64,000 nucleotides of DNA from Octopus sinensis. Taxonomy: Eukaryota. The translations under genes and the position numbers were made by a program. The stretch spans positions 16,058,001 through 16,122,000 of the forward strand of contig NC_043023.1 of assembly GCF_006345805.1 (NCBI RefSeq), read 5' to 3'. The notes beneath the pieces were generated by a model. It made no database searches. It was not told the DNA's origin and saw nothing but the letters and a program-made list of their open reading frames with translations. Positions 1 to 63,342 of the stretch are shown one piece after another (the stretch's first letter is position 1; each line of letters begins with the position of its first letter).

Positions 1-3000
1 TTTCTCCTGAAACAGAGAGCGAAGAAATATCAAGACCGCCAACAGGAAACTAGATATGCTAGAAATAACAGCTAAATGGTTTTCAAATTGGATAGGTTCG
101 TTTGTGCATTTGTTAATTTCTCCTGAAACAGAGAGCGAAGAAATATCAAGACCGCCAACAGGAAACTAGATATGCTAGAAATAACAGCTAAATGGTTTTC
201 AAATTGGATAGGTTCGTTTGTGCATTTGTTAATTTCTCCTGAAACAGAGAGCGAAGAAATATCAAGACCGCCAACAGGAAACTAGATATGCTAGAAATAA
301 CAGCTAAATGGTTTTCAAATTGGATAGGTTCGTTTGTGCATTTGTTAATTTCTCCTGAAACAGAGAGCGAAGAAATATCAAGACCGCCAACAGGAAACTA
401 GATATGCTAGAAATAACAGCTAAATGGTTTTCAAATTGGATAGGTTCGTTTGTGCATTTGTTAATTTCTCCTGAAACAGAGAGCGAAGAAATATCAAGAC
501 CGCCAACAGGAAACTAGATATGCTAGAAATAACAGCTAAATGGTTTTCAAATTGGATAGGTTCGTTTGTGCATTTGTTAATTTCTCCTGAAACAGAGAGC
601 GAAGAAATATCAAGACCGCCAACAGGAAACTAGATATGCTAGAAATAACAGCTAAATGGTTTTCAAATTGGATAGGTTCGTTTGTGCATTTGTTAATTTC
701 TCCTGAAACAGAGAGCGAAGAAATATCAAGACCGCCAACAGGAAACTAGATATGCTAGAAATAACAGCTAAATGGTTTTCAAATTGGATAGGTTCGTTTG
801 TGCATTTGTTTAATTTCTCCTGAAACAGAGAGCGAAGAAATATCAAGACCCCAACAGGATACTAGATATGCTAGAAATAACAGCTAAATGGTTTTCAAAT
901 TGGATAGGTTCGTTTGTGCATTTGTTTATTTCTCCTGAAACAGAGAGCGAAGAAATATCAAGACCGCCAACAGGAAACTAGATATGCTAGAAATAACAGC
1001 TAAATGGTTTTCAAATTGGATAGGTTCGTTTGTGCATTTGTTTATTTCTCCTGAAACAGAGAGCGAAGAAATATCAAGACCGCCAACAGGAAACTAGATA
1101 TGCTAGAAATAACAGCTAAATGGTTTTCAAATTGGATAGGTTCGTTTGTGCATTTGTTTATTTCTCCTGAAACAGAGAGCGAAGAAATATCAAGACCGCC
1201 AACAGGAAACTAGATTTGCTAGAAATAACAGCTAAATGGTTTTCAAATTGGATAGGTTCGTTTATGCATTTGTTTATTTCTCCTGAAACAGAGAGCGAAG
1301 AAATATCAAGACCGCCAACAGGAAACTAGATATGCTAGAAATAACAGCAAATGGTTTTCAAATTGGATAGGTTCGTTTATGCATTTGTTAATTTCTCCTG
1401 AAACAGAGAGCGAAGAAATATCAAGACCGCCAACAGGAAACTAGATATGCTAGAAATAACAGCTAAATGGTTTTCAAATTGGATAGGTTCGTTTATGCAT
1501 TTGTTTATTTCTCCTGAAACAGAGAGCGAAGAAATATCAAGACCGCCAACAGGAAACTAGATATGCTAGAAATAACAGCTAAATGGTTTTCAAATTGGAT
1601 AGGTTCGTTTATGCATTTGTTTATTTCTCCTGAAACAGAGAGCGAAGAAATATCAAGACCCCCAACAGGAAACTAGATATGCTAGAAATAACAGCTAAAT
1701 GGTTTTCAAATTGGATAGGTTCGTTTATGCATTTGTTTATTTCTCCTGAAACAGAGAGCGAAGAAATATCAAGACCGCCAACAGGAAACTAGATATGCTA
1801 GAAATAACAGCTAAATGGTTTTCAAATTGGATAGGTTCGTTTATGCATTTGTTTATTTCTCCTGAAACAGAGAGCGAAGAAATATCAAGACCGCCAACAG
1901 GAAACTAGATATGCTAGAAATAACAGCTAAATGGTTTTCAAATTGGATAGGTTCGTTATGCATTTGTTTATTTCTCCTGAAACAGAGAGCGAAGAAATAT
2001 CAAGACCGCCAACAGGAAACTAGATATGCTAGAAATAACAGCAAAATGGTTTTCAAATTGGATAGGTTCGTTTATGCATTTGTTTATTTCTCCTGAAACA
2101 GAGAGCGAAGAAATATCAAGACCGCCGACAGGAAACTAGATATGCTAGAAATAACAGCTAAATGGTTTTCAAATTGGATAGGTTCGTTTGTGCATTTGTT
2201 TATTTCTCCTGAAACAGAGAGCGAAGAAATATCAAGACCGCCAACAGGAAACTAGATATGCTAGAAATAACAGCTAAATGGTTTTCAAATTGGATAGGTT
2301 CGTTTGTGCATTTGTTAATTTCTCCTGAAACAGAGAGCGAAGAAATATCAAGACCGCCAACAGGAAACTAGATATGCTAGAAATAACAGCTAAATGGTTT
2401 TCAAATTGGATAGGTTCGTTTATGCATTTGTTATTTCTCCTGAAACAGAGAGCGAAGAAATATCAAGACCGCCAACAGGAAACTAGATATGCTAGAAATA
2501 ACAGCTAAATGGTTTTCAAATTGGATAGGTTCGTTTATGCATTTGTTTATTTCTCCTGAAACAGAGAGCGAAGAAATATCAAGACCGCCAACAGGAAACT
2601 AGATATGCTAGAAATAACAGCTAAATGGTTTTCAAATTGGATAGGTTCGTTTATGCATTTGTTTATTTCTCCTGAAACAGAGAGCGAAGAAATATCAAGA
2701 CCGCCAACAGGAAACTAGATATGCTAGAAATAACAGCTAAATGGTTTTCAAATTGGATAGGTTCGTTTGTGCATTTGTTAATTTCTCCTGAAACAGAGAG
2801 CGAAGAAATATCAAGACCGCCAACAGGAAACTAGATATGCTAGAAATAACAGCTAAATGGTTTTCAAATTGGATAGGTTCGTTTATGCATTTGTTTATTT
2901 CTCCTGAAACAGAGAGCGAAGAAATATCAAGACCGCCAACAGGAAACTAGATATGCTAGAAATAACAGCTAAATGGTTTTCAAATTGGATAGGTTCGTTT

Positions 3001-6000
3001 ATGCATTTGTTTATTTCTCCTGAAACAGAGAGCGAAGAAATATCAAGACCGCCAACAGGAAACTAGATATGCTAGAAATAACAGCTAAATGGTTTTCAAA
3101 TTGGATAGGTTCGTTTGTGCATTTGTTTATTTCTCCTGAAACAGAGAGCGAAGAAATATCAAGACCGCCAACAGGATACTAGATTTGCTAGAAATAACAG
3201 CTAAATGGTTTTCAAATTGGATAGGTTCGTTTATGCATTTGTTAATTTCTCCTGAAACAGAGAGCGAAGAAATATCAAGACCGCCAACAGGAAACTAGAT
3301 ATGCTAGAAATAACAGCTAAATGGTTTTCAAATTGGATAGGTTCGTTTATGCATTTGTTTATTTCTCCTGAAACAGAGAGCGAAGAAATATCAAGACCGC
3401 CAACAGGAAACTAGATATGCTAGAAATAACAGCAAAATGGTTTTCAAATTGGATAGGTTCGTTTATGCATTTGTTTATTTCTCCTGAAACAGAGAGCGAA
3501 GAAATATCAAGACCGCCAACAGGAAACTAGATATGCTAGAAATAACAGCAAAATGGTTTTCAAATTGGATAGGTTCGTTTATGCATTTGTTTATTTCTCC
3601 TGAAACAGAGAGCGAAGAAATATCAAGACCGCCAACAGGAAACTAGATATGCTAGAAATAACAGCTAAATGGTTTTCAAATTGGATAGGTTCGTTTATGC
3701 ATTTGTTTATTTCTCCTGAAACAGAGAGCGAAGAAATATCAAGACCGCCAACAGGAAACTAGATATGCTAGAAATAACAGCAAAATGGTTTTCAAATTGG
3801 ATAGGTTCGTTTATGCATTTGTTTATTTCTCCTGAAACAGAGAGCGAAGAAATATCAAGACCGCCGACAGGAAACTAGATATGCTAGAAATAACAGCAAA
3901 TGGTTTTCAAATTGGATAGGTTCGTTTATGCATTTGTTTATTTCTCCTGAAACAGAGAGCGAAGAAATATCAAGACCGCCAACAGGAAACTAGATATGCT
4001 AGAAATAACAGCAAAATGGTTTTCAAATTGGATAGGTTCGTTTATGCATTTGTTTATTTCTCCTGAAACAGAGAGCGAAGAAATATCAAGACCGCCAACA
4101 GGAAACTAGATATGCTAGAAATAACAGCAAAATGGTTTTCAAATTGGATAGGTTCGTTTGTGCATTTGTTTATTTCTCCTGAAACAGAGAGCGAAGAAAT
4201 ATCAAGACCGCCAACAGGAAACTAGATATGCTAGAAATAACAGCAAAATGGTTTTCAAATTGGATAGGTTCGTTTGTGCATTTGTTTATTTCTCCTGAAA
4301 CAGAGAGCGAAGAAATATCAAGACCGCCAACAGGAAACTAGATATGCTAGAAATAACAGCTAAATGGTTTTCAAATTGGATAGGTTCGTTTATGCATTTG
4401 TTAATTTCTCCTGAAACAGAGAGCGAAGAAATATCAAGACCGCCAACAGGAAACTAGATATGCTAGAAATAACAGCAAAATGGTTTTCAAATTGGATAGG
4501 TTCGTTTATGCATTTGTTTATTTCTCCTGAAACAGAGAGCGAAGAAATATCAAGACCGCCAACAGGAAACTAGATATGCTAGAAATAACAGCTAAATGGT
4601 TTTCAAATTGGATAGGTTCGTTTATGCATTTGTTTATTTCTCCTGAAACAGAGAGCGAAGAAATATCAAGACCCCCAACAGGAAACTAGATATGCTAGAA
4701 ATAACAGCTAAATGGTTTTCAAATTGGATAGGTTCGTTTATGCATTTGTTAATTTCTCCTGAAACAGAGAGCGAAGAAATATCAAGACCCCCAACAGGAA
4801 ACTAGATATGCTAGAAATAACAGCAAAATGGTTTTCAAATTGGATAGGTTCGTTTATGCATTTGTTTATTTCTCCTGAAACAGAGAGCGAAGAAATATCA
4901 AGACCGCCAACAGGAAACTAGATATGCTAGAAATAACAGCTAAATGGTTTTCAAATTGGATAGGTTCGTTTATGCATTTGTTAATTTCTCCTGAAACAGA
5001 GAGCGAAGAAATATCAAGACCGCCAACAGGAAACTAGATATGCTAGAAATAACAGCTAAATGGTTTTCAAATTGGATAGGTTCGTTTATGCATTTGTTAA
5101 TTTCTCCTGAAACAGAGAGCGAAGAAATATCAAGACCGCCAACAGGAAACTAGATATGCTAGAAATAACAGCTAAATGGTTTTCAAATTGGATAGGTTTG
5201 TGTATGCATTTGTTTATTTCTCCTGAAACAGAGAGCGAAGAAATATCAAGACCGCCAACAGGAAACTAGATATGCTAGAAATAACAGCTAAATGGTTTTC
5301 AAATTGGATAGGTTCGTTATGCATTTGTTTATTTCTCCTGAAACAGAGAGCGAAGAAATATCAAGACCGCCAACAGGAAACTAGATATGCTAGAAATAAC
5401 AGCTAAATGGTTTTCAAATTGGATAGGTTCGTTTATGCATTTGTTTATTTCTCCTGAAACAGAGAGCGAAGAAATATCAAGACCGCCAACAGGAAACTAG
5501 ATATGCTAGAAATAACAGCTAAATGGTTTTCAAATTGGATAGGTTCGTTTATGCATTTGTTTATTTCTCCTGAAACAGAGAGCGAAGAAATATCAAGACC
5601 GCCAACAGGAAACTAGATATGCTAGAAATAACAGCAAAATGGTTTTCAAATTGGATAGGTTTGTGTATGCATTTGTTTATTTCTCCTGAAACAGAGAGCG
5701 AAGAAATATCAAGACCGCCAACAGGAAACTAGATATGCTAGAAATAACAGCTAAATGGTTTTCAAATTGGATAGGTTCGTTTATGCATTTGTTTATTTCT
5801 CCTGAAACAGAGAGCGAAGAAATATCAAGACCGCCAACAGGAAACTAGATATGCTAGAAATAACAGCTAAATGGTTTTCAAATTGGATAGGTTCGTTTGT
5901 GCATTTGTTTATTTCTCCTGAAACAGAGAGCGAAGAAATATCAAGACCGCCAACAGGAAACTAGATATGCTAGAAATAACAGCAAATGGTTTTCAAATTG

Positions 6001-9000
6001 GATAGGTTCGTTTATGCATTTGTTTATTTCTCCTGAAACAGAGAGCGAAGAAATATCAAGACCGCCAACAGGAAACTAGATATGCTAGAAATAACAGCTA
6101 AATGGTTTTCAAATTGGATAGGTTCGTTTATGCATTTGTTTATTTCTCCTGAAACAGAGAGCGAAGAAATATCAAGACCGCCAACAGGATACTAGATATG
6201 CTAGAAATAACAGCTAAATGGTTTTCAAATTGGATAGGTTCGTTTATGCATTTGTTTATTTCTCCTGAAACAGAGAGCGAAGAAATATCAAGACCGCCAA
6301 CAGGATACTAGATTGCTAGAAATAACAGCTAAATGGTTTTCAAATTGGATAGGTTCGTTTATGCATTTGTTTATTTCTCCTGAAACAGAGAGCGAAGAAA
6401 TATCAAGACCGCCAACAGGATACTAGATTTGCTAGAAATAACAGCTAAATGGTTTTCAAATTGGATAGGTTCGTTTATGCATTTGTTTATTTCTCCTGAA
6501 ACAGAGAGCGAAGAAATATCAAGACCGCCAACAGGAAACTAGATATGCTAGAAATAACAGCAAATGGTTTTCAAATTGGATAGGTTCGTTTGTGCATTTG
6601 TTAATTTCTCCTGAAACAGAGAGCGAAGAAATATCAAGACCGCCAACAGGAAACTAGATATGCTAGAAATAACAGCAAAATGGTTTTCAAATTGGATAGG
6701 TTCGTTTATGCATTTGTTTATTTCTCCTGAAACAGAGAGCGAAGAAATATCAAGACCGCCAACAGGAAACTAGATATGCTAGAAATAACAGCAAAATGGT
6801 TTTCAAATTGGATAGGTTCGTTTGTGCATTTGTTTATTTCTCCTGAAACAGAGAGCGAAGAAATATCAAGACCGCCAACAGGAAACTAGATATGCTAGAA
6901 ATAACAGCAAAATGGTTTTCAAATTGGATAGGTTCGTTTATGCATTTGTTTATTTCTCCTGAAACAGAGAGCGAAGAAATATCAAGACCGCCAACAGGAA
7001 ACTAGATATGCTAGAAATAACAGCTAAATGGTTTTCAAATTGGATAGGTTCGTTTATGCATTTGTTTATTTCTCCTGAAACAGAGAGCGAAGAAATATCA
7101 AGACCGCCAACAGGAAACTAGATATGCTAGAAATAACAGCTAAATGGTTTTCAAATTGGATAGGTTCGTTTATTTCTCCTGAAACAGAGAGCGAAGAAAT
7201 ATCAAGACCGCCAACAGGAAACTAGATATGCTAGAAATAACAGCAAAATGGTTTTCAAATTGGATAGGTTCGTTTATGCATTTGTTTATTTCTCCTGAAA
7301 CAGAGAGCGAAGAAATATCAAGACCGCCAACAGGAAACTAGATATGCTAGAAATAACAGCAAAATGGTTTTCAAATTGGATAGGTTCGTTTATTTCTCCT
7401 GAAACAGAGAGCGAAGAAATATCAAGACCGCCAACAGGAAACTAGATATGCTAGAAATAACAGCTAAATGGTTTTCAAATTGGATAGGTTCGTTTATGCA
7501 TTTGTTTATTTCTCCTGAAACAGAGAGCGAAGAAATATCAAGACCGCCAACAGGAAACTAGATATGCTAGAAATAACAGCTAAATGGTTTTCAAATTGGA
7601 TAGGTTCTTTATTTCTCCTGAAACAGAGAGCGAAGAAATATCAAGACCGCCAACAGGAAACTAGATATGCTAGAAATAACAGCTAAATGGTTTTCAAATT
7701 GGATAGGTTCGTTTATGCATTTGTTTATTTCTCCTGAAACAGAGAGCGAAGAAATATCAAGACCGCCAACAGGAAACTAGATATGCTAGAAATAACAGCA
7801 AAATGGTTTTCAAATTGGATAGGTTCGTTTATTTCTCCTGAAACAGAGAGCGAAGAAATATCAAGACCGCCAACAGGAAACTAGATATGCTAGAAATAAC
7901 AGCTAAATGGTTTTCAAATTGGATAGGTTCGTTTATGCATTTGTTTATTTCTCCTGAAACAGAGAGCGAAGAAATATCAAGACCGCCAACAGGAAACTAG
8001 ATATGCTAGAAATAACAGCTAAATGGTTTTCAAATTGGATAGGTTCGTTTATTTCTCCTGAAACAGAGAGCGAAGAAATATCAAGACCGCCAACAGGAAA
8101 CTAGATATGCTAGAAATAACAGCTAAATGGTTTTCAAATTGGATAGGTTCGTTTATGCATTTGTTTATTTCTCCTGAAACAGAGAGCGAAGAAATATCAA
8201 GACCGCCAACAGGAAACTAGATATGCTAGAAATAACAGCTAAATGGTTTTCAAATTGGATAGGTTCGTTTGTGCATTTGTTAATTTCTCCTGAAACAGAG
8301 AGCGAAGAAATATCAAGACCGCCAACAGGAAACTAGATATGCTAGAAATAACAGCTAAATGGTTTTCAAATTGGATAGGTTCGTTTATGCATTTGTTTAT
8401 TTCTCCTGAAACAGAGAGCGAAGAAATATCAAGACCGCCAACAGGAAACTAGATATGCTAGAAATAACAGCTAAATGGTTTTCAAATTGGATAGGTTCGT
8501 TTGTGCATTTGTTAATTTCTCCTGAAACAGAGAGCGAAGAAATATCAAGACCGCCAACAGGAAACTAGATATGCTAGAAATAACAGCTAAATGGTTTTCA
8601 AATTGGATAGGTTCGTTTATGCATTTGTTTATTTCTCCTGAAACAGAGAGCGAAGAAATATCAAGACCGCCAACAGGAAACTAGATATGCTAGAAATAAC
8701 AGCTAAATGGTTTTCAAATTGGATAGGTTCGTTTGTGCATTTGTTAATTTCTCCTGAAACAGAGAGCGAAGAAATATCAAGACCGCCAACAGGAAACTAG
8801 ATATGCTAGAAATAACAGCTAAATGGTTTTCAAATTGGATAGGTTCGTTTATGCATTTGTTTATTTCTCCTGAAACAGAGAGCGAAGAAATATCAAGACC
8901 GCCAACAGGAAACTAGATATGCTAGAAATAACAGCTAAATGGTTTTCAAATTGGATAGGTTCGTTTGTGCATTTGTTAATTTCTCCTGAAACAGAGAGCG

Positions 9001-12000
9001 AAGAAATATCAAGACCGCCAACAGGAAACTAGATATGCTAGAAATAACAGCTAAATGGTTTTCAAATTGGATAGGTTCGTTTATGCATTTGTTTATTTCT
9101 CCTGAAACAGAGAGCGAAGAAATATCAAGACCGCCAACAGGAAACTAGATATGCTAGAAATAACAGCTAAATGGTTTTCAAATTGGATAGGTTCGTTTGT
9201 GCATTTGTTAATTTCTCCTGAAACAGAGAGCGAAGAAATATCAAGACCGCCAACAGGAAACTAGATATGCTAGAAATAACAGCTAAATGGTTTTCAAATT
9301 GGATAGGTTCGTTTGTGCATTTGTTAATTTCTCCTGAAACAGAGAGCGAAGAAATATCAAGACCGCCAACAGGAAACTAGATATGCTAGAAATAACAGCT
9401 AAATGGTTTTCAAATTGGATAGGTTCGTTTGTGCATTTGTTAATTTCTCCTGAAACAGAGAGCGAAGAAATATCAAGACCGCCAACAGGAAACTAGATAT
9501 GCTAGAAATAACAGCTAAATGGTTTTCAAATTGGATAGGTTCGTTTGTGCATTTGTTAATTTCTCCTGAAACAGAGAGCGAAGAAATATCAAGACCGCCA
9601 ACAGGAAACTAGATATGCTAGAAATAACAGCTAAATGGTTTTCAAATTGGATAGGTTCGTTTGTGCATTTGTTAATTTCTCCTGAAACAGAGAGCGAAGA
9701 AATATCAAGACCGCCAACAGGAAACTAGATATGCTAGAAATAACAGCTAAATGGTTTTCAAATTGGATAGGTTCGTTTGTGCATTTGTTAATTTCTCCTG
9801 AAACAGAGAGCGAAGAAATATCAAGACCGCCAACAGGAAACTAGATATGCTAGAAATAACAGCTAAATGGTTTTCAAATTGGATAGGTTCGTTTATTTCT
9901 CCTGAAACAGAGAGCGAAGAAATATCAAGACCGCCAACAGGAAACTAGATATGCTAGAAATAACAGCAAAATGGTTTTCAAATTGGATAGGTTCGTTTAT
10001 GCATTTGTTTATTTCTCCTGAAACAGAGAGCGAAGAAATATCAAGACCGCCAACAGGAAACTAGATATGCTAGAAATAACAGCTAAATGGTTTTCAAATT
10101 GGATAGGTTCGTTTGTGCATTTGTTAATTTCTCCTGAAACAGAGAGCGAAGAAATATCAAGACCGCCAACAGGAAACTAGATATGCTAGAAATAACAGCT
10201 AAATGGTTTTCAAATTGGATAGGTTCGTTTGTGCATTTGTTAATTTCTCCTGAAACAGAGAGCGAAGAAATATCAAGACCGCCAACAGGAAACTAGATAT
10301 GCTAGAAATAACAGCTAAATGGTTTTCAAATTGGATAGGTTCGTTTGTGCATTTGTTAATTTCTCCTGAAACAGAGAGCGAAGAAATATCAAGACCGCCA
10401 ACAGGAAACTAGATATGCTAGAAATAACAGCTAAATGGTTTTCAAATTGGATAGGTTCGTTTGTGCATTTGTTATTTCTCCTGAAACAGAGAGCGAAGAA
10501 ATATCAAGACCGCCAACAGGAAACTAGATATGCTAGAAATAACAGCTAAATGGTTTTCAAATTGGATAGGTTCGTTTGTGCATTTGTTAATTTCTCCTGA
10601 AACAGAGAGCGAAGAAATATCAAGACCGCCAACAGGAAACTAGATATGCTAGAAATAACAGCTAAATGGTTTTCAAATTGGATAGGTTCGTTTGTGCATT
10701 TGTTAATTTCTCCTGAAACAGAGAGCGAAGAAATATCAAGACCGCCAACAGGAAACTAGATATGCTAGAAATAACAGCTAAATGGTTTTCAAATTGGATA
10801 GGTTCGTTTGTGCATTTGTTAATTTCTCCTGAAACAGAGAGCGAAGAAATATCAAGACCGCCAACAGGAAACTAGATATGCTAGAAATAACAGCTAAATG
10901 GTTTTCAAATTGGATAGGTTCGTTTGTGCATTTGTTAATTTCTCCTGAAACAGAGAGCGAAGAAATATCAAGACCGCCAACAGGATACTAGATATGCTAG
11001 AAATAACAGCTAAATGGTTTTCAAATTGGATAGGTTCGTTTGTGCATTTGTTAATTTCTCCTGAAACAGAGAGCGAAGAAATATCAAGACCGCCAACAGG
11101 ATACTAGATATGCTAGAAATAACAGCTAAATGGTTTTCAAATTGGATAGGTTCGTTTGTGCATTTGTTTATTTCTCCTGAAACAGAGAGCGAAGAAATAT
11201 CAAGACCCCCAACAGGAAACTAGATATGCTAGAAATAACAGCTAAATGGTTTTCAAATTGGATAGGTTGTGTATGCATTGTTTATTTCTCCTGAAACAGA
11301 GAGCGAAGAAATATCAAGACCCCCAACAGGATACTAGATATGCTAGAAATAACAGCTAAATGGTTTTCAAATTGGATAGGTTCGTTTATGCATTTGTTTA
11401 TTTCTCCTGAAACAGAGAGCGAAGAAATATCAAGACCCCCAACAGGAAACTAGATATGCTAGAAATAACAGCTAAATGGTTTTCAAATTGGATAGGTTCG
11501 TTTGTGCATTTGTTAATTTCTCCTGAAACAGAGAGCGAAGAAATATCAAGACCGCCAACAGGAAACTAGATATGCTAGAAATAACAGCAAAATGGTTTTC
11601 AAATTGGATAGGTTTGTGTATGCATTTGTTTATTTCTCCTGAAACAGAGAGCGAAGAAATATCAAGACCGCCAACAGGAAACTAGATATGCTAGAAATAA
11701 CAGCTAAATGGTTTTCAAATTGGATAGGTTCGTTTATGCATTTGTTTATTTCTCCTGAAACAGAGAGCGAAGAAATATCAAGACCGCCAACAGGAAACTA
11801 GATATGCTAGAAATAACAGCTAAATGGTTTTCAAATTGGATAGGTTCGTTTGTGCATTTGTTTATTTCTCCTGAAACAGAGAGCGAAGAAATATCAAGAC
11901 CGCCAACAGGAAACTAGATATGCTAGAAATAACAGCTAAATGGTTTTCAAATTGGATAGGTTCGTTTATGCATTTGTTTATTTCTCCTGAAACAGAGAGC

Positions 12001-13921
12001 GAAGAAATATCAAGACCGCCAACAGGAAACTAGATATGCTAGAAATAACAGCTAAATGGTTTTCAAATTGGATAGGTTCGTTTGTGCATTTGTTAATTTC
12101 TCCTGAAACAGAGAGCGAAGAAATATCAAGACCGCCAACAGGATACTAGATATGCTAGAAATAACAGCTAAATGGTTTTCAAATTGGATAGGTTCGTTTA
12201 TGCATTTGTTTATTTCTCCTGAAACAGAGAGCGAAGAAATATCAAGACCGCCAACAGGAAACTAGATATGCTAGAAATAACAGCTAAATGGTTTTCAAAT
12301 TGGATAGGTTCGTTTATGCATGTGTTATTTCTCCTGAAACAGAGAGCGAAGAAATATCAAGACCCCCAACAGGATACTAGATTTGCTAGAAATAACAGCT
12401 AAATGGTTTTCAAATTGGATAGGTTTGTGTATGCATTTGTTTATTTCTCCTGAAACAGAGAGCGAAGAAATATCAAGACCCCCAACAGGATACTAGATTG
12501 CTAGAAATAACAGCTAAATGGTTTTCAAATTGGATAGGTTTGTGTATGCATTTGTTTATTTCTCCTGAAACAGAGAGCGAAGAAATATCAAGACCCCCAA
12601 CAGGAAACTAGATATGCTAGAAATAACAGCTAAATGGTTTTCAAATTGGATAGGTTCGTTTGTGCATTTGTTAATTTCTCCTGAAACAGAGAGCGAAGAA
12701 ATATCAAGACCGCCAACAGGAAACTAGATATGCTAGAAATAACAGCTAAATGGTTTTCAAATTGGATAGGTTCGTTTGTGCATTTGTTAATTTCTCCTGA
12801 AACAGAGAGCGAAGAAATATCAAGACCGCCGACAGGAAACTAGATATGCTAGAAATAACAGCTAAATGGTTTTCAAATTGGATAGGTTCGTTTGTGCATT
12901 TGTTAATTTCTCCTGAAACAGAGAGCGAAGAAATATCAAGACCGCCGACAGGAAACTAGATATGCTAGAAATAACAGCTAAATGGTTTTCAAATTGGATA
13001 GGTTCGTTTGTGCATTTGTTAATTTCTCCTGAAACAGAGAGCGAAGAAATATCAAGACCGCCAACAGGAAACTAGATATGCTAGAAATAACAGCTAAATG
13101 GTTTTCAAATTGGATAGGTTTGTTTATGCATGTGTTTATTTCTCCTGAAACAGAGAGCGAAGAAATATCAAGACCGCCAACAGGAAACTAGATATGCTAG
13201 AAATAACAGCTAAATGGTTTTCAAATTGGATAGGTTTGTGTATGCATTTGTTTATTTCTCCTGAAACAGAGAGCGAAGAAATATCAAGACCGCCAACAGG
13301 AAACTAGATATGCTAGAAATAACAGCTAAATGGTTTTCAAATTGGATAGGTTTGTGTATGCATGTGTTTATTTCTCCTGAAACAGAGAGCGAAGAAATAT
13401 CAAGACCGCCAACAGGAAACTAGATATGCTAGAAATAACAGCTAAATGGTTTTCAAATTGGATAGGTTTGTGTATGCATGTGTTTATTTCTCCTGAAACA
13501 GAGAGCGAAGAAATATCAAGACCGCCAACAGGAAACTAGATATGCTAGAAATAACAGCTAAATGGTTTTCAAATTGGATAGGTTCGTTTGTGCATTTGTT
13601 AATTTCTCCTGAAACAGAGAGCGAAGAAATATCAAGACCCCCAACAGGAAACTAGATATGCTAGAAATAACAGCTAAATGGTTTTCAAATTGGATAGGTT
13701 CGTTTATGCATTTGTTTATTTCTCCTGAAACAGAGAGCGAAGAAATATCAAGACCGCCAACAGGAAACTAGATATGCTAGAAATAACAGCTAAATGGTTT
13801 TCAAATTGGATAGGTTCGTTTATGCATTTGTTTATTTCTCCTGAAACAGAGAGCGAAGAAATATCAAGACCGCCAACAGGATACTAGATTTGCTAGAAAT
13901 AACAGCTAAATGGTTTTCAAA
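1..13921. repeat. Tandem satellite, 116-bp monomer, about 120 copies; the array runs off the left edge of the window
   Basis: The monomer TTTCTCCTGAAACAGAGAGCG...GCATTTGTTAA restarts at 1, 117, 233 and onward. Copies differ by only a few recurrent SNPs and indels. The array ends mid-monomer at ...TGGTTTTCAAA (13921). Confidence 0.99.
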
Positions 13922-20099: not shown

Positions 20100-20560
20100 T
20101 CACTCTTCTCTATGATGAGAAAGATATCTGTAGTTAATTGTCTTTTTTCAGAGAAGGATATACCACAGAATCAGTTACATGGTTTCTCTTCCATATCAAT
20201 GTGTGTCTGTGTTTATCTAAGTCAATGCTTTTCAACCTTTTTGCTGGAGCGGAACCCTAAGGAAACATTCCACTGGCTCGAGGAACCCCTGTCCAATAAT
20301 TTAATAGTCTTATGCACACATATCTGCACAGGAAAATTAAAAATTACTGTCGATTTTAGCAGTTTTGTAACTTCTTGCGGAACCCCTGGACTGTACTGGT
20401 GGAACCCTAAGGTTCTGCGGAACCCTGGTTGAAAACCACTGATCTAAGAGATATATTTGAGAGAACCATTCACCACAGATATCACAATGACATGGTTTCT
20501 CTCCTAATGAATTCGTCTGTGAGTGGTCAAGTGATCTATTTCAGAGAATGATTCACCACG
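20100..20560 (-). pseudogene. Decayed C2H2 zinc-finger remnants downstream of the ZNF stop codon
   Basis: Minus-strand relics include [38 protein letters not shown] and EEKPCN*FCGISFSEKRQL, with stops and indels. Confidence 0.8.
20223..20441. mobile_element. hAT (Charlie-like) MITE, 219 bp
   Basis: 15-bp TIRs CAATGCTTTTCAACC / GGTTGAAAACCACTG match at 13/15. The 8-bp TSD is ATCTAAGT / ATCTAAGA. Confidence 0.85.
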
Positions 20561-20564
20561 GGTG

Positions 20565-22126
20565 TCACAATGATGATTTCATTCCTGAAGGAATACATTT
20601 GTGTCTACTTAAATGTCCCTTTTGAGTGAATGATCTCCCGCAGATATCACAGTGATATGGCTTTTCACCTGTATGAATACGCTTGTGTTTAGTTAAGTTA
20701 ACTTTTACAGAGAATGATTTCCCACAGATATCACAGTGGTAAGGTTTCTCACCTGTATGGATAAATTTGTGAGTGGATAGGTCACCACTTCGAGAGAATG
20801 ATTTACTACAGATATCACAGTGATATGGTTTCTCACCTGTATGAGTACGTTTATGTACAGTTACAGCACTTCTGTGAGTGAATGATTTACCACAGATATC
20901 ACAGTGATGTGGTTTCTCACCTGTATGAGTAAGTTTGTGTTTCGTTAAATGTTCCTTTTGGGAAAATGATTTCTCACAAGTATCGCAATGATATGGTTTC
21001 TCTCCTGTATGAATACGTTTGTGTTTAGCTAAGTTAACTCTCACGGAGAATGATTTATCACAGATGTCACAATGAAAAGGTTTCTCTCCTGTATGAACGA
21101 GTTTATGAATCGCTAAGTCACCGTTTCGAGAGAATGATTTACCACAGATATCACAGTGATATGGTTTCTCTCCTGTATGGGTACGTTTGTGAACAGTTAT
21201 AGAACTTCTGTGAGCAAATGATTTACCACAGATATCACAGTGGTGTGGTTTCTCACCTGTATGGGTAAGTTTGTGATGAGTTAAATTAGTTTTGCAAGAG
21301 AAATATTTATCACAGTTGTCACACTGATAAGGTTTCTCACCTGTATGAATACGTTTATGGGTGTATAAGTTACTTTTGCAAGAGAAAGATTTACTGCATA
21401 TCTCACAGTGATACGGTTTCTCACCTGTATGAATGCGTTTGTGAAGAGTTACTTTAAAACTCTGAGAGAATGATTTACCACAGACATCACAGCGATATGG
21501 TTTCAATCCTGTATGAGTCTGTTTGTGCAGAGTTAGAGTATTTTTATGAGAGAATGATTTACCACAGGTATCACAGTGATATAATTTCTCACCTGTATGT
21601 GTGCGTCTGTGAATAGTTAAATTAGTTTTGTAAGAGAAAGATTTACCACAGTTATCACAGTGATATGGTTTCTCTCCTGTATGAGTACGTTTATGGTTGG
21701 TTAAATTTGTTTTGTAAGCAAACGATTTATTGCACAAATTACAGTGGTATGGCTTCTCACCTGTATGAATACGTTTGTGAAGATTAACTTTACTACTTTG
21801 AGAGAATGATTTACCACAGATATCACAGTGATATAGTTTCAATCCTGAATGAACATGTTTGTGTACAGCTATGGTACTTCTGTGAGAGAATGATTTACCA
21901 CAGATATCACAGCGATATGGTTGCTCTCCTGTATGAATATGTTTGTGAGCGGTTAAGTGGTGACTACGACTGAATGATTTACCACAGATATCACAGTGAT
22001 ATGGTCTCTCTCCTGTATGAATACGTTTGTGTACACTTAAGAGATCATTACGAGAGAATGATTTACCGCAAATATCACAATGGTATTTTCTCTCACCTGT
22101 ATGAGTAGGTTTGTGGTTAGATAAGG
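20565..22126 (-). CDS. C2H2 zinc-finger array protein, 3' part (rest of finger 9 and fingers 10-27; the last finger lacks its second His)
   Basis: Tandem C-x2-C-x12-H-x3-H repeats with TGEKPY linkers in ORF 20565..22202. Confidence 0.93.
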
Positions 22127-22866
22127 TTTTTGTGAGTAAAAGATTTACCACAGATATCACAATGATAAGGTTTCTCACCTGTGTGAATGCGTTTGTGTGC
22201 ACTTAGATGGGGCTTTTGAGAGAAAGATTTTCCACAGACATCACAGTGATATGGCTTCTCACCTGTATGGATATGCATGTGAATAGCCAAAATAGATTTT
22301 TGAGAGAATGATTTACCACAGATATTACAGTGGAATGGCTTCTCACCTGTATGAACACGTCTGTGTTCAGTTAAGGTATTCCTGTGAGGAAATGATTTTC
22401 CACAGGTATCACAATGATATGGTGTCTCACCTGTATGAATGCGTTTGTGAGCAGTTAAGGTATTATTTCTAGAGAATGATTCACCACATATGTCGCAATG
22501 GTATGGCTTCTCTCCTATATGAATATTTCTATGAACATTTAAGGTATTTACCAGAGAGAAAGATTTACCACAGACATCGCAATGATGTGGTTTCTCACCT
22601 GTATGAACATGCTTGTGATTTGTCAAGGTATTCCTTTGAGAGAAAGATTTACCACAGATACCACAGTGATAGGGCTTCTCACCTGTATGAATGCGTTTAT
22701 GAATAGCCAAGGTACTATTTGTAGAGAATGATTTACCACAGATATCACAATGATATGGTTTCTCTCCTGTGTGAATATTTCTGTGAATAGTTAGGTTACC
22801 TTTTTTAGAGAATGATTTTTTACAGATATCACAGTCGTATACAGATTTTCCTCTTTCTTTTGGCAT
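22127..22866 (-). CDS. C2H2 zinc-finger array protein, 5' part (ATG at 22866, MPKERGKS..., fingers 1-9); joined to the 3' part across a 2-nt frameshift
   Basis: Eight complete fingers plus the first half of finger 9. The first true ATG is at 22866, because the ORF-track start is a TTG. Acceptor-like TAG and CAG lie just upstream of the ATG. Confidence 0.9.
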
Positions 22867-23364
22867 CTCTGCAGGTAAATCTACCAAAAATTAAAGTTTC
22901 TCACACAATTTTTCTTTCTGTAATTTTTTTCTTCAACAAAATGGTCTGGAAATGTCCTATCTTCTTGTTTCTATATTTTATTCCTAACAAATGTTACAAC
23001 TGCCATATTTTTATCAAATATAAGCTTTGCTGATATCTTAAGATGTTGCAAATGTCTTTGTAAATTTATCCAAGTTTATTTAGAATTCAAATTTAGGTTT
23101 TACCCATTTCAGAGTGAATCCAAGAAATTTCACCAATAACGTCACCCAGAAGAAATATTTTACTGAAATTCACAGTTAATTTACATAAACAGGGTTCTTA
23201 TATCCTGTTCTGTGTAACATCATCTTCAAAATATGATAAATATTGATGACGCTTCTGCAGTAAAATTCCTCTGATGCCAATGTCCTCTGATATTCTGAAA
23301 TAAGAGAGAAACAACAGTTTAAGACAGAGTGTAGCTTTGGTTATGACAAAGGCTTGGTGTTCAT

Positions 23365-56219: not shown

Positions 56220-56258
56220 GTTTGGCAAGCGCAGGAATTTATGATATTATCCAAAGTG
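56220..56258 (+). CDS. Coding exon 2 (39-nt micro-exon): (C)LASA-GIYDIIQS(E), the end of the signal peptide
   Basis: Acceptor TTTTTATCTCTTACAG| and donor G|GTAAAT. Phase 1-1 and open in frame. It completes an A-x-A signal peptidase motif. Confidence 0.8.
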
Positions 56259-58540: not shown

Positions 58541-59062
<522 letters not shown>

Positions 59063-59243: not shown

Positions 59244-59492
59244 AAAATATTAAACTGAACGGAAAAGCCAATCTCAGTATTACAGTACCGAATATGCGAA
59301 GACCAGTGGTTTGGCAGTGCCAGAATTATAAATATGAATGCGACAGGACATGCGCTAACGGCACTAATTACCAGGTTAGCCACAGTGGGAATACTTCTAT
59401 GCTCTTAATCAGAAAAGTAACAAAGGACTGTTTGACTTGGGCGTTTGCAGACGACAATATCAACCTTGGAAGAACCAAATTGACGATAAACA
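59244..59492 (+). CDS. Coding exon 3 (249 nt): atypical Ig-like domain
   Basis: Acceptor TTTCTTTCTTTCAG| and donor A|GTAAGG. Phase 1-1 with 83 open codons. It shows alternating beta-strand patterns (LSITV, VVWQC, SMLLIRKV, TKLTI) and three N-glycosylation sequons. Confidence 0.88.
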
Positions 59493-59514: not shown

Positions 59515-60205
59515 TCTTTACTCTTTTACTTGTTTCAGTCATTTGACTGCGGCCATGCTGGAGCACCGCCTTTAGTCGAGCAACTCGACCCCAGGACTTG
59601 ATCTTTTGTAAGCCCAGTACTTATTCTATCGGTCTCTCTTTTGCCGAATCGCTAAGTTTACTCTTTTACTTGTTTCAGTCATTTGACTGCGGCCATGCTG
59701 GAGCACCGCCTTTAGTCGAGCAACTCGACCCCAGGACTTAATCTTTTGTAAGCCCAGTACTTATTCTATCGGTCTCTTTTGCCGAACCGCAAAGTAACGG
59801 GGACATAAACATGCCAGCATCAGTTGTCAAGCAATGCTAGGGGGACAAACACAGACACACAAACGCATATATATATATATATATACGACGGGCTTCTTTC
59901 AGTTTCTGTCTACCAAATCCACTCGCAAGGCTTTGGTCGGCCTGAGGCTATAGCAGAAGACACTTGCCCAAGATGCCACGCAGTGGGAATGAACCCGGAA
60001 CCATGTGGTTGGTAAACAAGCTACTTACCACACAGCCACTCCTGTGCCTATATACGATGGGCTTCTTTCAGTTTCCGTCTACCAAATCCACTCACAAGGC
60101 TTTGGTCGGCCCGGGGCTATAGTAGAAGACACTCGCCCAAAGTGCCATGCAGTGGGACTGAACCCGGAACCATGTGGTTGGTAAGCAAGCTACTTACCAC
60201 ACAGT
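59515..60205 (-). mobile_element. Family A SINE with a duplicated tail and a duplicated head
   Basis: Reverse complement of family A segments. Confidence 0.85.
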
Positions 60206-62061: not shown

Positions 62062-62643
62062 CTCTTTACTCTTTTACTTGTTTCAGTCATTTGACTGCGG
62101 CCATGCTGGAGCACCGCCTTTAGTCGAGCAACTCGACCCCGGGACTTATTCTTTTTGTAAGCCCAGTACTTATTCTATCGGTCTCTTTTTACCGAACCGC
62201 TAAGTGACGGGGACGTAAACACACCAGCATCGGTTGTCAAGCAATGCTAGGGGGACAAACACAGACACAAACATATATACACACATACATACATATATAT
62301 ATATACATATATACGACAGGCTTCTTTCAGTTTCCGTCTACCAAATCCACTCACAAGGCTTTGGTCGGCCCGAGGCTATAGCAGAAGACACTTGCCCAAG
62401 ATGCCACGCAGTGGGACTGAACCCGGAACCATGTGGTTGGTAAACAAGCTACTTACTACACAGCCACTCCTGTGCCTATATACGATGGGCTTCTTTCAGT
62501 TTCCGTCTACCAAATCCACTCACAAGGCTTTGGTCGGCCCGAGGCTATAGCAGAAGACACTTGCCCAAGATGCCACGCAGTGGGACTGAACCCGGAACCA
62601 TGTGGTTGGTAAACAAGCTACTTACCACACAGCCACTCCTACG
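62062..62643 (-). mobile_element. Family A SINE with a duplicated head
   Basis: Reverse complement of family A. Confidence 0.85.
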
Positions 62644-63190: not shown

Positions 63191-63208
63191 TATTGTTTAT
63201 CTTTGTAG

Positions 63209-63342
63209 GTGATACACCTGAGGCATCCGATGATATCCAAATGAAATCGTTTGCAGGTGGTGCACAAGGAACCAGCAGCCTCAGAACCAAGTCCATCCTT
63301 GTCATTGGGATGATAACAGCCGTCATCATTTATACATTTTAA
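63209..63342 (+). CDS. Coding exon 4: linker plus a C-terminal hydrophobic GPI-anchor-like signal, then stop
   Basis: Acceptor TTGTTTATCTTTGTAG|, phase 1. It reads (S)DTPEASDDIQMKSFAGGAQGTSSLRTKSILVIGMITAVIIYTF*. Confidence 0.85.

What the first reader, a model, noticed from the sequence alone, without database searches (positions are those of the whole stretch)
59244..59492. Ig-like domain lacks the canonical B-F disulfide and has a C-x6-C-x3-C...C pattern; possible relative of squid Thy-1-like Sgp-1
The exon is symmetric phase 1-1, typical of Ig-domain exons, and has a C-strand Trp (VVWQC) and an E-strand S-x-L-x-I-x-x-V pattern. The usual B-strand Cys and the D-x-G-x-Y-x-C motif are replaced (LSITV; DCLTWAF). 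Four other cysteines (C52, C59, C63, C89) and three sequons (NLS, NGT, NTS) suggest an alternative disulfide scheme. From memory, a small GPI-linked Ig-related glycoprotein, Sgp-1, was purified from squid nervous tissue as a Thy-1-like molecule, and this protein has the same architecture. I have not aligned the two sequences.
Basis: partly seen in the sequence, partly recalled or inferred. Interest (0 to 1): 0.7.

Follow-up and report, generated by a model that had tools for sequence, protein, structure and literature searches.

The report
Octopus GPI-anchored Ig-like surface protein
This exon encodes the whole extracellular domain of a small, uncharacterised octopus surface glycoprotein with an immunoglobulin-like fold that lacks the usual core disulfide and belongs to a gene family expanded in octopuses; a link to squid Sgp-1 could not be tested.

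Summary
Window 59244-59492 (+) is a phase 1-1, AG/GT-bounded exon. It is exon 3 of a 4-exon Octopus sinensis gene, LOC115225106, which encodes a 137-aa "uncharacterized protein". The protein has a signal peptide, one 92-aa domain and a GPI-type C-terminal signal.

Pfam does not recognise the domain. An AlphaFold2 model built on 33 family domains is very confident (pLDDT 95.7), and its 50 best Foldseek matches in the PDB listing are all Ig domains. Weak I-set hits in paralogues point the same way, and an abalone relative passes Pfam's I-set cut-off.

The canonical B and F cysteines are replaced by I39 and F94. C59 and C63 are (near-)invariant. C52 and C89 appear and disappear together across 33 domains. 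This suggests disulfides C59-C63 and C52-C89.

Every named cephalopod relative is an uncharacterised protein from Octopus or Argonauta. Many of them cluster on one scaffold. They carry one to four domains and either GPI-type or transmembrane anchors.

The orthologue comparison gives dN/dS of about 0.27.

No squid relative was found, and the Sgp-1 sequence could not be retrieved, so that part of the interpretation remains untested. Function (cell-surface recognition or adhesion, analogous to Thy-1) is inferred.

The parts
43034..43073 (+). Exon 1, coding part. ATG at 43034. Encodes MDILKFFCLYALC plus 1 base, the first half of the signal peptide. The donor is gtaagt.
   Evidence: the spliced model equals P0001
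56220..56258 (+). Exon 2 (39 nt, phase 1-1). Encodes (C)LASAGIYDIIQS, the end of the signal peptide. The predicted cleavage is ASA|G, followed by the start of the mature protein.
59244..59492 (+). Exon 3, the finding. It encodes the whole Ig-like domain: 82 full codons, residues 28-109, phase 1-1. It contains W50, C52, C59, C63, C89, W92, F94 and D96, plus three N-glycosylation sequons.
63257..63342 (+). Exon 4, coding part. Encodes (S)GAQGTSSLRTKSILVIGMITAVIIYTF and the stop codon. It has small residues for a possible omega site (S110-G111-A112), a polar spacer, and a 15-aa hydrophobic tail that ends the protein. This is a GPI-attachment-type signal.
   Evidence: tail mean Kyte-Doolittle value 2.54; no cytoplasmic residues
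63209..63256 (+). Alternative upstream acceptor (ag at 63207-63208). It adds an in-frame 16-aa linker, (S)DTPEASDDIQMKSFAG, between the domain and the GPI signal. The same linker occurs in isoform X2 of the neighbouring gene LOC115225109.
52156..52359 (-). Decayed paralogous Ig-domain exon, antisense within intron 1. It is closest to the P0024 subfamily. It has lost 8 residues, including the invariant C59, and has no recognisable G strand. The syntenic copy in O. bimaculoides has an in-frame stop at the W92 position. This is an old pseudogene remnant and not part of the functional gene.

Best explanation
The exon encodes the single extracellular domain of a small cell-surface glycoprotein, O. 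sinensis LOC115225106.

Proposed maturation:
- The signal peptide is removed after A18.
- The roughly 92-aa mature chain folds as an I-set-like immunoglobulin beta-sandwich.
- The usual B-F disulfide is replaced by hydrophobic packing of I39 and F94 around the invariant W50.
- The fold is pinned instead by a short C59-C63 loop disulfide at the end of strand C' and by a C52-C89 bridge between the neighbouring C and F strands.
- Up to three N-glycans are added.
- The C-terminal hydrophobic peptide is exchanged for a GPI anchor near S110-A112.

Proposed function:
- With no cytoplasmic part, the protein would act as a membrane-tethered recognition or adhesion ligand, or as a co-receptor. This is analogous to Thy-1 and other GPI-linked IgSF molecules.
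- Binding would probably use the most conserved surface: the B-C loop and C strand (PNMRRPVVW) and the C' segment (NYKYECDRTCANG).

Family:
- It is one member of a tandemly expanded family found in octopods.
- Paralogues carry one to four such domains, each presumably on a phase 1-1 exon.
- Paralogues have either GPI-type or transmembrane-plus-cytoplasmic anchors.

Shown: gene structure, family membership, Ig-like fold (predicted), absence of the canonical cysteines, cysteine covariation, purifying selection.
Inferred: the actual disulfide pairs, GPI anchoring, glycosylation, the binding face and the biological role.
For: - Gene model: it is exact to the NCBI protein.
- Fold: AF2 on alignment A2 gives pLDDT 95.7 and pTM 0.86, with eight beta strands. 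Foldseek against the PDB gives 115 hits at E<=1e-3, and the 50 listed are all Ig domains. They include antibody VL domains, a nanobody (TMq 0.74), obscurin Ig32 (TM 0.69/0.71, rmsd 2.9 over 90 columns) and sDscam Ig1.
- Sequence link to Ig: 7 of 33 domains hit I-set weakly (best E 0.0067). The 4-domain paralogue P0004 scores 23.6 bits against a cut-off of 23.7. The abalone relative P0029 was found at E 8.5e-8 and scores 56.8 bits on I-set, E 2.4e-15. hhalign of the octopus profile against the abalone repeats gives probability 81% and E 1.3e-5. Of the twelve weak PDB sequence hits, ten are Ig-domain proteins: titin, obscurin, CD2, CD79b and myotilin.
- Canonical cysteine positions: I39 and F94, from the obscurin alignment.
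- Cysteines across the family: C59 is present in 33/33 domains and C63 in 31/33. C52 and C89 are both present in 14, both absent in 15 and discordant in 4 (Fisher p 1.6e-5).
- Selection: comparison with the syntenic O. bimaculoides orthologue gives dN 0.134, dS 0.49 and omega 0.27. Residues 42-50 and 54-69 are unchanged.
- C-terminus: a 15-residue hydrophobic stretch ends the protein, preceded by S-G-A and a polar spacer. Paralogues have either such tails or a transmembrane segment with a cytoplasmic tail.
Against: - Pfam gives no hit at all for this protein or exon, even at E<=10.
- The fold rests on a prediction, not on a solved structure.
The pairing is inferred from covariation among related, non-independent sequences and from strand adjacency.
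- No GPI or signal-peptide predictor was available. A tail-less transmembrane anchor is not excluded.
- I obtained no expression, localisation or binding data, so the recognition or adhesion role is an argument by analogy.
- Third-codon-position divergence (27%) exceeds that of nearby alignable intron (10-16%), so the dS estimate on 82 codons is noisy.
Confidence: 0.72

Rival explanations
1. It is the octopus orthologue or a close homologue of squid Sgp-1, the Thy-1-like GPI glycoprotein purified from squid brain. On this view it is a major neuronal surface glycoprotein conserved across coleoid cephalopods.
For:
- The Sgp-1 paper exists: Williams, Tse, Gagnon 1988, Immunogenetics 27:265, cited in PMC2189447.
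Against: - The Sgp-1 sequence could not be obtained, so no alignment was made.
- The exhaustive profile search of 1.84 billion representatives returned 34 hits. None of the 30 looked up by name, nor the named hits, is called Sgp-1 or comes from a squid.
- I could not verify that squid proteomes or Sgp-1 are in that library.
Confidence: 0.15
2. It is an immune-type or pattern-recognition receptor component. On this view the family is a lineage-specific, rapidly diversifying IgSF family with paired GPI and transmembrane forms, used in innate defence rather than in neural or epithelial adhesion.
For: - The family is tandemly expanded on one scaffold and includes both GPI-type and TM-plus-tail paralogues.
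- One paralogue, LOC115225115, has at least 12 isoforms.
- Orthologues share only 77% amino-acid identity, with replacements concentrated outside the conserved core.
Against: - Omega is 0.27, so there is no overall positive selection.
- The putative binding region (residues 42-69) is the most conserved part, not the most variable.
- No signalling motifs were examined, and no expression data were obtained.
Confidence: 0.15
3. The domain is not truly immunoglobulin-related. It would be another beta-sandwich (for example FN3, PKD/Big-like or a novel fold) that converges on Ig-like sequence patterns.
For: - There is no Pfam hit for this protein.
- Weak profile hits to archaeal repeat proteins appeared at E 4e-7 to 2e-4.
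- The best single PDB sequence hit to the 3-sequence profile was a metalloprotease domain at E 0.94.
Against: - All 50 listed Foldseek matches are Ig V-set or I-set domains, with probability 1.00.
- The only Pfam families hit repeatedly by family members are I-set and Ig_3.
- The abalone relative passes the I-set gathering score.
- The C-strand Trp and the E-F motif align residue for residue with obscurin.
- A phase 1-1 exon is typical of IgSF domains (established knowledge).
Confidence: 0.05

Closest known systems
Thy-1 (CD90)
   Same: - A signal peptide, a single Ig-like domain of about 90-110 aa and a GPI-type C-terminal signal.
- Three N-glycosylation sequons.
- No cytoplasmic part.
- The Thy-1 properties are from established knowledge.
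   Different: - Thy-1 keeps the canonical B-F disulfide and adds a second bridge near the two ends of the domain. This protein has I39 and F94 at the canonical positions and a C-x6-C-x3-C...C pattern.
- No vertebrate Thy-1 was retrieved by the profile search, so homology beyond shared IgSF ancestry is not shown.
Squid Sgp-1 (Williams, Tse, Gagnon 1988)
   Same: That is the same overall architecture.
   Different: - No comparison was possible because the sequence was not obtainable.
- No squid homologue was found in the searches.
I-set Ig domains without a core disulfide (titin, obscurin, myotilin) and CD2/CD58 domain 1
   Same: - An Ig sandwich that is stable without the B-F disulfide (established knowledge).
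- The best low-rmsd structural match is obscurin Ig32.
- Weak sequence hits to titin, obscurin, myotilin and CD2.
   Different: - Titin, obscurin and myotilin are intracellular muscle proteins, and CD2 and CD58 are vertebrate V-set adhesion domains.
- None has the E-C-x3-C loop or the C-F strand cysteine pair.
- This domain has a 6-residue insertion (NYKYEC) relative to obscurin, between the C strand and the D strand.
Haliotis rufescens LOC124119024 (P0029), five tandem repeats
   Same: - The only non-cephalopod animal relative found (E 8.5e-8; hhalign E 1.3e-5).
- It shares the C-strand W, the C-x3-C motif, the STLTI E strand and D-x-G-x-W-x-[I/F]-x-D.
- It also lacks both canonical cysteines.
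   Different: - It has five repeats and a transmembrane anchor.
- Each repeat has an extra cysteine at each end.
- It lacks equivalents of C52 and C89.
- It passes Pfam's I-set cut-off, whereas the octopus protein does not.

Membership tests
Immunoglobulin superfamily (I-set-like Ig domain) | Two-sheet Greek-key beta-sandwich with Ig strand order | tested here: met
   The AF2 model has pLDDT 95.7 and eight strands. Foldseek gives 115 PDB matches at E<=1e-3, and the 50 listed are all Ig domains. This rests on a predicted structure, not a solved one.
Immunoglobulin superfamily (I-set-like Ig domain) | Invariant C-strand tryptophan | tested here: met
   W50 is present in 33/33 family domains. It aligns with the obscurin C-strand W.
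Immunoglobulin superfamily (I-set-like Ig domain) | Conserved B-strand to F-strand disulfide (common but not obligatory) | tested here: not met
   I39 and F94 occupy the two positions. Across the family these columns hold I/T/V/A and F/V/I/Y, never Cys.
Immunoglobulin superfamily (I-set-like Ig domain) | E-F motif D-x-G-x-Y-x-C | tested here: inconclusive
   The motif is present in altered form, D88-C-L-T-W92-A-F94. The abalone relative has D-A-G-T-W-x-I.
Immunoglobulin superfamily (I-set-like Ig domain) | Significant match to a curated Ig profile (Pfam gathering score) | tested here: not met
   This protein gives 0 Pfam hits. Paralogue P0004 scores 23.6 bits against a 23.7 cut-off. The abalone relative scores 56.8 bits. 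The link is therefore transitive only.
GPI-anchored protein | N-terminal signal peptide, plus a C-terminal signal made of small omega-site residues, a polar spacer and a hydrophobic tail that ends the protein | tested here: met
   Judged by sequence rules only. The signal peptide has K5, the h-region FFCLYALCCLA and the cleavage motif A-S-A|G. The C-terminus has S110-G-A, QGTSSLRTKS and the 15-aa tail ILVIGMITAVIIYTF. No dedicated predictor was available.
GPI-anchored protein | Release by PI-PLC, or chemical detection of the anchor | not testable with these tools
   This needs an experiment.
Thy-1 family | Detectable sequence homology to Thy-1 | tested here: not met
   No vertebrate protein appeared among the 34 profile hits. 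Only the architecture is shared.
Thy-1 family | The Thy-1 cysteine pattern: the canonical B-F pair plus a pair near the two ends of the domain | tested here: not met
   The cysteines lie at positions 52, 59, 63 and 89. None is at the B, F or terminal positions.
Sgp-1 (squid) | Sequence similarity to the published Sgp-1 protein | not testable with these tools
No hit bearing that name was found.

The most novel reading that the evidence does not exclude
The family is an octopod-specific, tandemly expanded system of Ig-like surface labels. GPI-tethered and signalling-competent transmembrane paralogues, together with multi-domain genes that have many isoforms assembled from phase 1-1 cassette exons, would bind one another through the conserved C/C' face. 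This would provide cell-identity or wiring codes in the octopus nervous system or suckers. It would be an IgSF counterpart to the known octopus protocadherin expansion, built on a disulfide architecture not described before.
Probability: 0.15. Interest if true: 0.7.

Novelty: new variant of a known kind. Interest (0 to 1): 0.4.

Why it matters
Octopus genomes are known for lineage-specific expansions of cell-surface and regulatory gene families. This finding defines another such family, which current annotation leaves as "uncharacterized protein" with no domain.

The family is a set of Ig-like proteins that profile libraries miss. It has a distinctive signature: W...E-C-x3-C...W-x-F-x-D, no core disulfide, and an optional C-F strand bridge.

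The work gives a testable disulfide map, a domain alignment that can be turned into a profile for annotating cephalopod genomes, and candidates for adhesion or recognition molecules. If the Sgp-1 link were confirmed, it would connect a 1988 protein-chemistry result to a gene family. As it stands, the result is a solid but modest annotation advance within the very large Ig superfamily.

Tried and rejected
- Pfam on the exon and on the full protein at E<=10 and E<=1 gave no hit.
- A PDB sequence search with the 3-sequence profile gave only an insignificant metalloprotease domain, E 0.94.
- Four of the seven literature searches, plus one look-up by PubMed id, were for Sgp-1. The 1988 paper appears only as a citation, so no sequence was obtained.
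- A search for the LOC identifiers in papers gave nothing. A search for a described octopus IgSF or GPI family gave nothing relevant.
- The search for homologous proteins with the abalone repeats gave no hits. With the domain alignment A2 it gave only six close octopus proteins because of the word index.
- The look-up of encoding contigs for P0001, P0003 and P0039 returned "not on record". As a result only one orthologue pair could be used for dN/dS, and no paralogue DNA was available.
- AF2 model coordinates are not exposed, so Cys-Cys distances could not be measured.
- I first considered the pairing C52-C59 plus C63-C89, suggested by the intronic antisense copy that keeps two cysteines. I rejected it for two reasons. 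That copy is a pseudogene, with a stop in the O. bimaculoides copy and a deletion of the invariant C59 here. Also, 15 intact domains keep only C59 and C63.
- The weak archaeal and metagenome hits (P0030, P0031, P0033, P0035, P0036) were set aside as repeat-summed chance or generic beta-sandwich similarity.

Full report
**1. The observation**

The stretch 59244-59492 follows an acceptor (tttcag) and is followed by a donor (gtaagg). Read from 59246, it gives 82 sense codons with no stop. Two bases lie before the first full codon and one after the last, so the exon is phase 1-1.

A protein search found a 100% identical, 137-aa NCBI protein: [quoted passage not shown]. It also found two O. bimaculoides relatives at 77% and 68% identity. 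The window is therefore octopus nuclear DNA.

tblastn and direct reading place the other coding exons at 43034-43073, 56220-56258 and 63257-63342. Splicing the four pieces reproduces the NCBI protein exactly. All three introns are GT-AG and phase 1.

**2. What the protein looks like**

Residues 1-18 form a signal peptide by the usual rules: K5, a hydrophobic core FFCLYALCCLA, and A-S-A before G19.

Residues about 20-110 are one domain, almost entirely encoded by the exon in question.

The C-terminus reads S110-G-A, then a polar spacer QGTSSLRTKS, then the 15 hydrophobic residues ILVIGMITAVIIYTF, which end the protein. This is the classical layout of a GPI-attachment signal. It is inferred by rule, because no predictor was available.

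A second acceptor at 63209 would add a 16-residue linker in frame. The same linker is seen in an isoform of the neighbouring gene LOC115225109.

**3. Is it an Ig domain?**

Pfam finds nothing in the exon or in the whole protein. A 3-sequence profile finds nothing significant among PDB sequences.

An exhaustive profile search of 1.84 billion representative proteins gave 34 hits at E<=1e-3, of which 24 were below 1e-10.

I cut 33 complete domains out of these hits and aligned them as A2. W50 and C59 are invariant. E58, C63, V71, W92, F94, D96 and L106 are nearly so.

AlphaFold2 on this alignment gave a very confident all-beta model: mean pLDDT 95.7, pTM 0.86, and strands at domain residues 4-6, 16-21, 29-33, 36-40, 50-55, 58-63, 72-76 and 82-86.

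Foldseek against the PDB gave 115 matches at E<=1e-3. All 50 listed are Ig domains: antibody VL domains, a nanobody (TMq 0.74), obscurin Ig32 (TM 0.69/0.71, rmsd 2.9 Å over 90 columns) and sDscam Ig1.

At the sequence level:
- 7 of 33 domains give weak I-set hits and 4 give weak Ig_3 hits.
- The four-domain paralogue P0004 scores 23.6 bits on I-set against a cut-off of 23.7.
- The one non-cephalopod animal relative is a five-repeat protein of the abalone Haliotis rufescens. It passes the I-set cut-off clearly, at 56.8 bits and E 2.4e-15.
- That abalone protein is linked to the octopus family at E 8.5e-8 and by hhalign at E 1.3e-5.
- With the 33-domain profile, ten of the twelve weak PDB sequence hits are Ig proteins: titin, obscurin, CD2, CD79b and myotilin.

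I conclude that the domain is Ig-like, closest to the I-set, and too diverged for the curated profiles.

**4. The missing core disulfide and what replaces it**

The HMM alignment to obscurin gives these correspondences:
- The B-strand Cys aligns with I39.
- The C-strand W aligns with W50.
- D-A-G-E-Y-T-C aligns with (D88)-C89-L-T-W92-A-F94.

Across the 33 domains, the two canonical positions are never Cys.

C59 is present in 33/33 domains and C63 in 31/33. In the other two domains the second Cys is shifted by one residue.

C52 and C89 are both present in 14 domains, both absent in 15, and discordant in 4 (Fisher p = 1.6e-5, not corrected for relatedness).

Fifteen intact extracellular domains keep only C59 and C63, so these two most likely pair with each other, closing a C-x3-C loop at the end of strand C'. 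C52 lies at the end of strand C and C89 just before strand F. These are neighbouring antiparallel strands in an Ig sandwich, so the two cysteines most likely form the second bridge.

Five of the domains that lack C52 and C89 instead have a pair in the F-G hairpin (F-C-D-x3-C).

The pairings are inferences. I could not read distances from the model, because its coordinates are not exposed.

**5. The family**

Every named cephalopod hit is an "uncharacterized" or "hypothetical" protein of O. bimaculoides, O. sinensis, O. vulgaris or Argonauta hians. The one exception is a "zinc finger protein 239-like" model (P0026), which is noted as an apparent fusion in the side observations.

In O. sinensis, at least ten loci lie on the same 21.3-Mb scaffold as this gene:
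- LOC115225106, 115225109, 115225115, 115225372 and 115225395
- LOC115225442, 115225463, 115225077, 118768220 and 118768178

Members have one to four tandem domains. Their anchors are either GPI-type tails or a transmembrane segment with a cytoplasmic tail. Some carry a second, different Cys-rich domain. LOC115225115 has at least 12 predicted isoforms. No squid, cuttlefish or nautilus protein was returned.

**6. Orthology and selection**

The O. bimaculoides locus of P0002 (L001) has the same four exons within 4.1 kb. It also has, in intron 1 on the opposite strand, the same decayed paralogous Ig exon that the window carries at 52359-52156.

In O. bimaculoides that copy has a stop at the W92 position. 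Here it has lost eight residues, including the invariant C59. It is therefore an old pseudogene remnant, and it confirms that the two genes are orthologues.

For exon 3, 42 of 246 coding bases differ, split 9/11/22 by codon position. Nei-Gojobori gives dN 0.134, dS 0.49 and omega 0.27. The 19 replacements avoid residues 42-50 and 54-69, all four cysteines, W92, F94 and D96.

The gene is thus under purifying selection, but it evolves fast for an orthologue pair whose alignable introns are 84-90% identical. The estimate rests on 82 codons and is noisy.

**7. Mechanism proposed**

A secreted-pathway, N-glycosylated single Ig domain held on the outer leaflet by a GPI anchor cannot signal on its own. 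By analogy with Thy-1 and other GPI-linked IgSF proteins (established knowledge), it most likely serves as a recognition or adhesion ligand, or as a co-receptor. It may pair with transmembrane paralogues.

The B-C loop with the C strand, and the C' segment, are the most conserved stretches both between paralogues and between orthologues. They are the best candidates for a binding or structural face. This part is inference. I have no expression or binding data.

**8. Sgp-1**

The paper exists: Williams, Tse, Gagnon 1988, cited in PMC2189447. It is not held in the library, and no paper in the library gives the sequence.

No hit carries that name, and no squid relative was found. I could not verify that squid proteomes are in the libraries searched. 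The proposed relationship therefore remains untested. The lack of decapodiform hits lowers it somewhat.

**9. Verdict**

The finding is real and mostly well read. It is a previously undescribed Ig-like family, apparently restricted to octopods, with a non-canonical disulfide scheme and a Thy-1-like architecture. It is a new variant within a very well-known superfamily, and its function is unknown. It is moderately interesting, mainly as an annotation and evolutionary result and as a source of candidate cephalopod recognition molecules.

Noticed in passing
window 1-13921: A 116-bp satellite in about 121 tandem copies with 97% matches. It fills the first 14 kb of the window.
   Followed up: no
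window 20459-22887 (- strand): An 84-bp-period array that encodes a C2H2 zinc-finger protein (ORF 20565-22202, 545 aa, zf-H2C2_2 E 3e-140). A similar array lies downstream, on the same strand as the orthologous gene, in O. bimaculoides (L001 20944-22134). The order and orientation therefore differ between the two species.
   Followed up: partly
window 44001-49447 (- strand), inside intron 1: Several ORFs with reverse-transcriptase domains (RVT_1 E 1e-22 to 1e-29, plus zf-RVT), which are retroelement remnants. Intron 1 is 13.1 kb here against about 2.6 kb in O. bimaculoides.
   Followed up: partly
window 52156-52359 (- strand); L001 11958-12212 (- strand): An antisense, decayed paralogous Ig exon sits in intron 1 and is shared by both octopus species. 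The O. bimaculoides copy has an in-frame stop, and the O. sinensis copy has an 8-residue deletion that removes the invariant C59.
   Followed up: yes
window 63209-63256: An alternative 3' splice site gives an in-frame 16-aa acidic linker isoform. The same linker is annotated for the neighbouring paralogue LOC115225109 isoform X2.
   Followed up: partly
window 59517-59795, 59880-60204, 62308-62640 and many other sites: SINE-like units of about 140 and 170 bp are repeated throughout the window and in the O. bimaculoides locus, including directly next to exon 3. A long (TA)n tract lies at 58543-59046, an ATC microsatellite of 544 copies at 33799-35429, and a 63-bp array at 31697-32991.
   Followed up: no
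proteins P0010 and P0026 (other O. sinensis loci): P0010 ends in GSARIINMNVTRHAL. This is the +1 frame of the conserved WxCxNYKYECDRTCANG segment, so that model contains a frameshift, from either a pseudogene or an assembly error. P0026 ("zinc finger protein 239-like") fuses C2H2 fingers to one of these Ig domains, which is probably a gene-model artefact.
   Followed up: no
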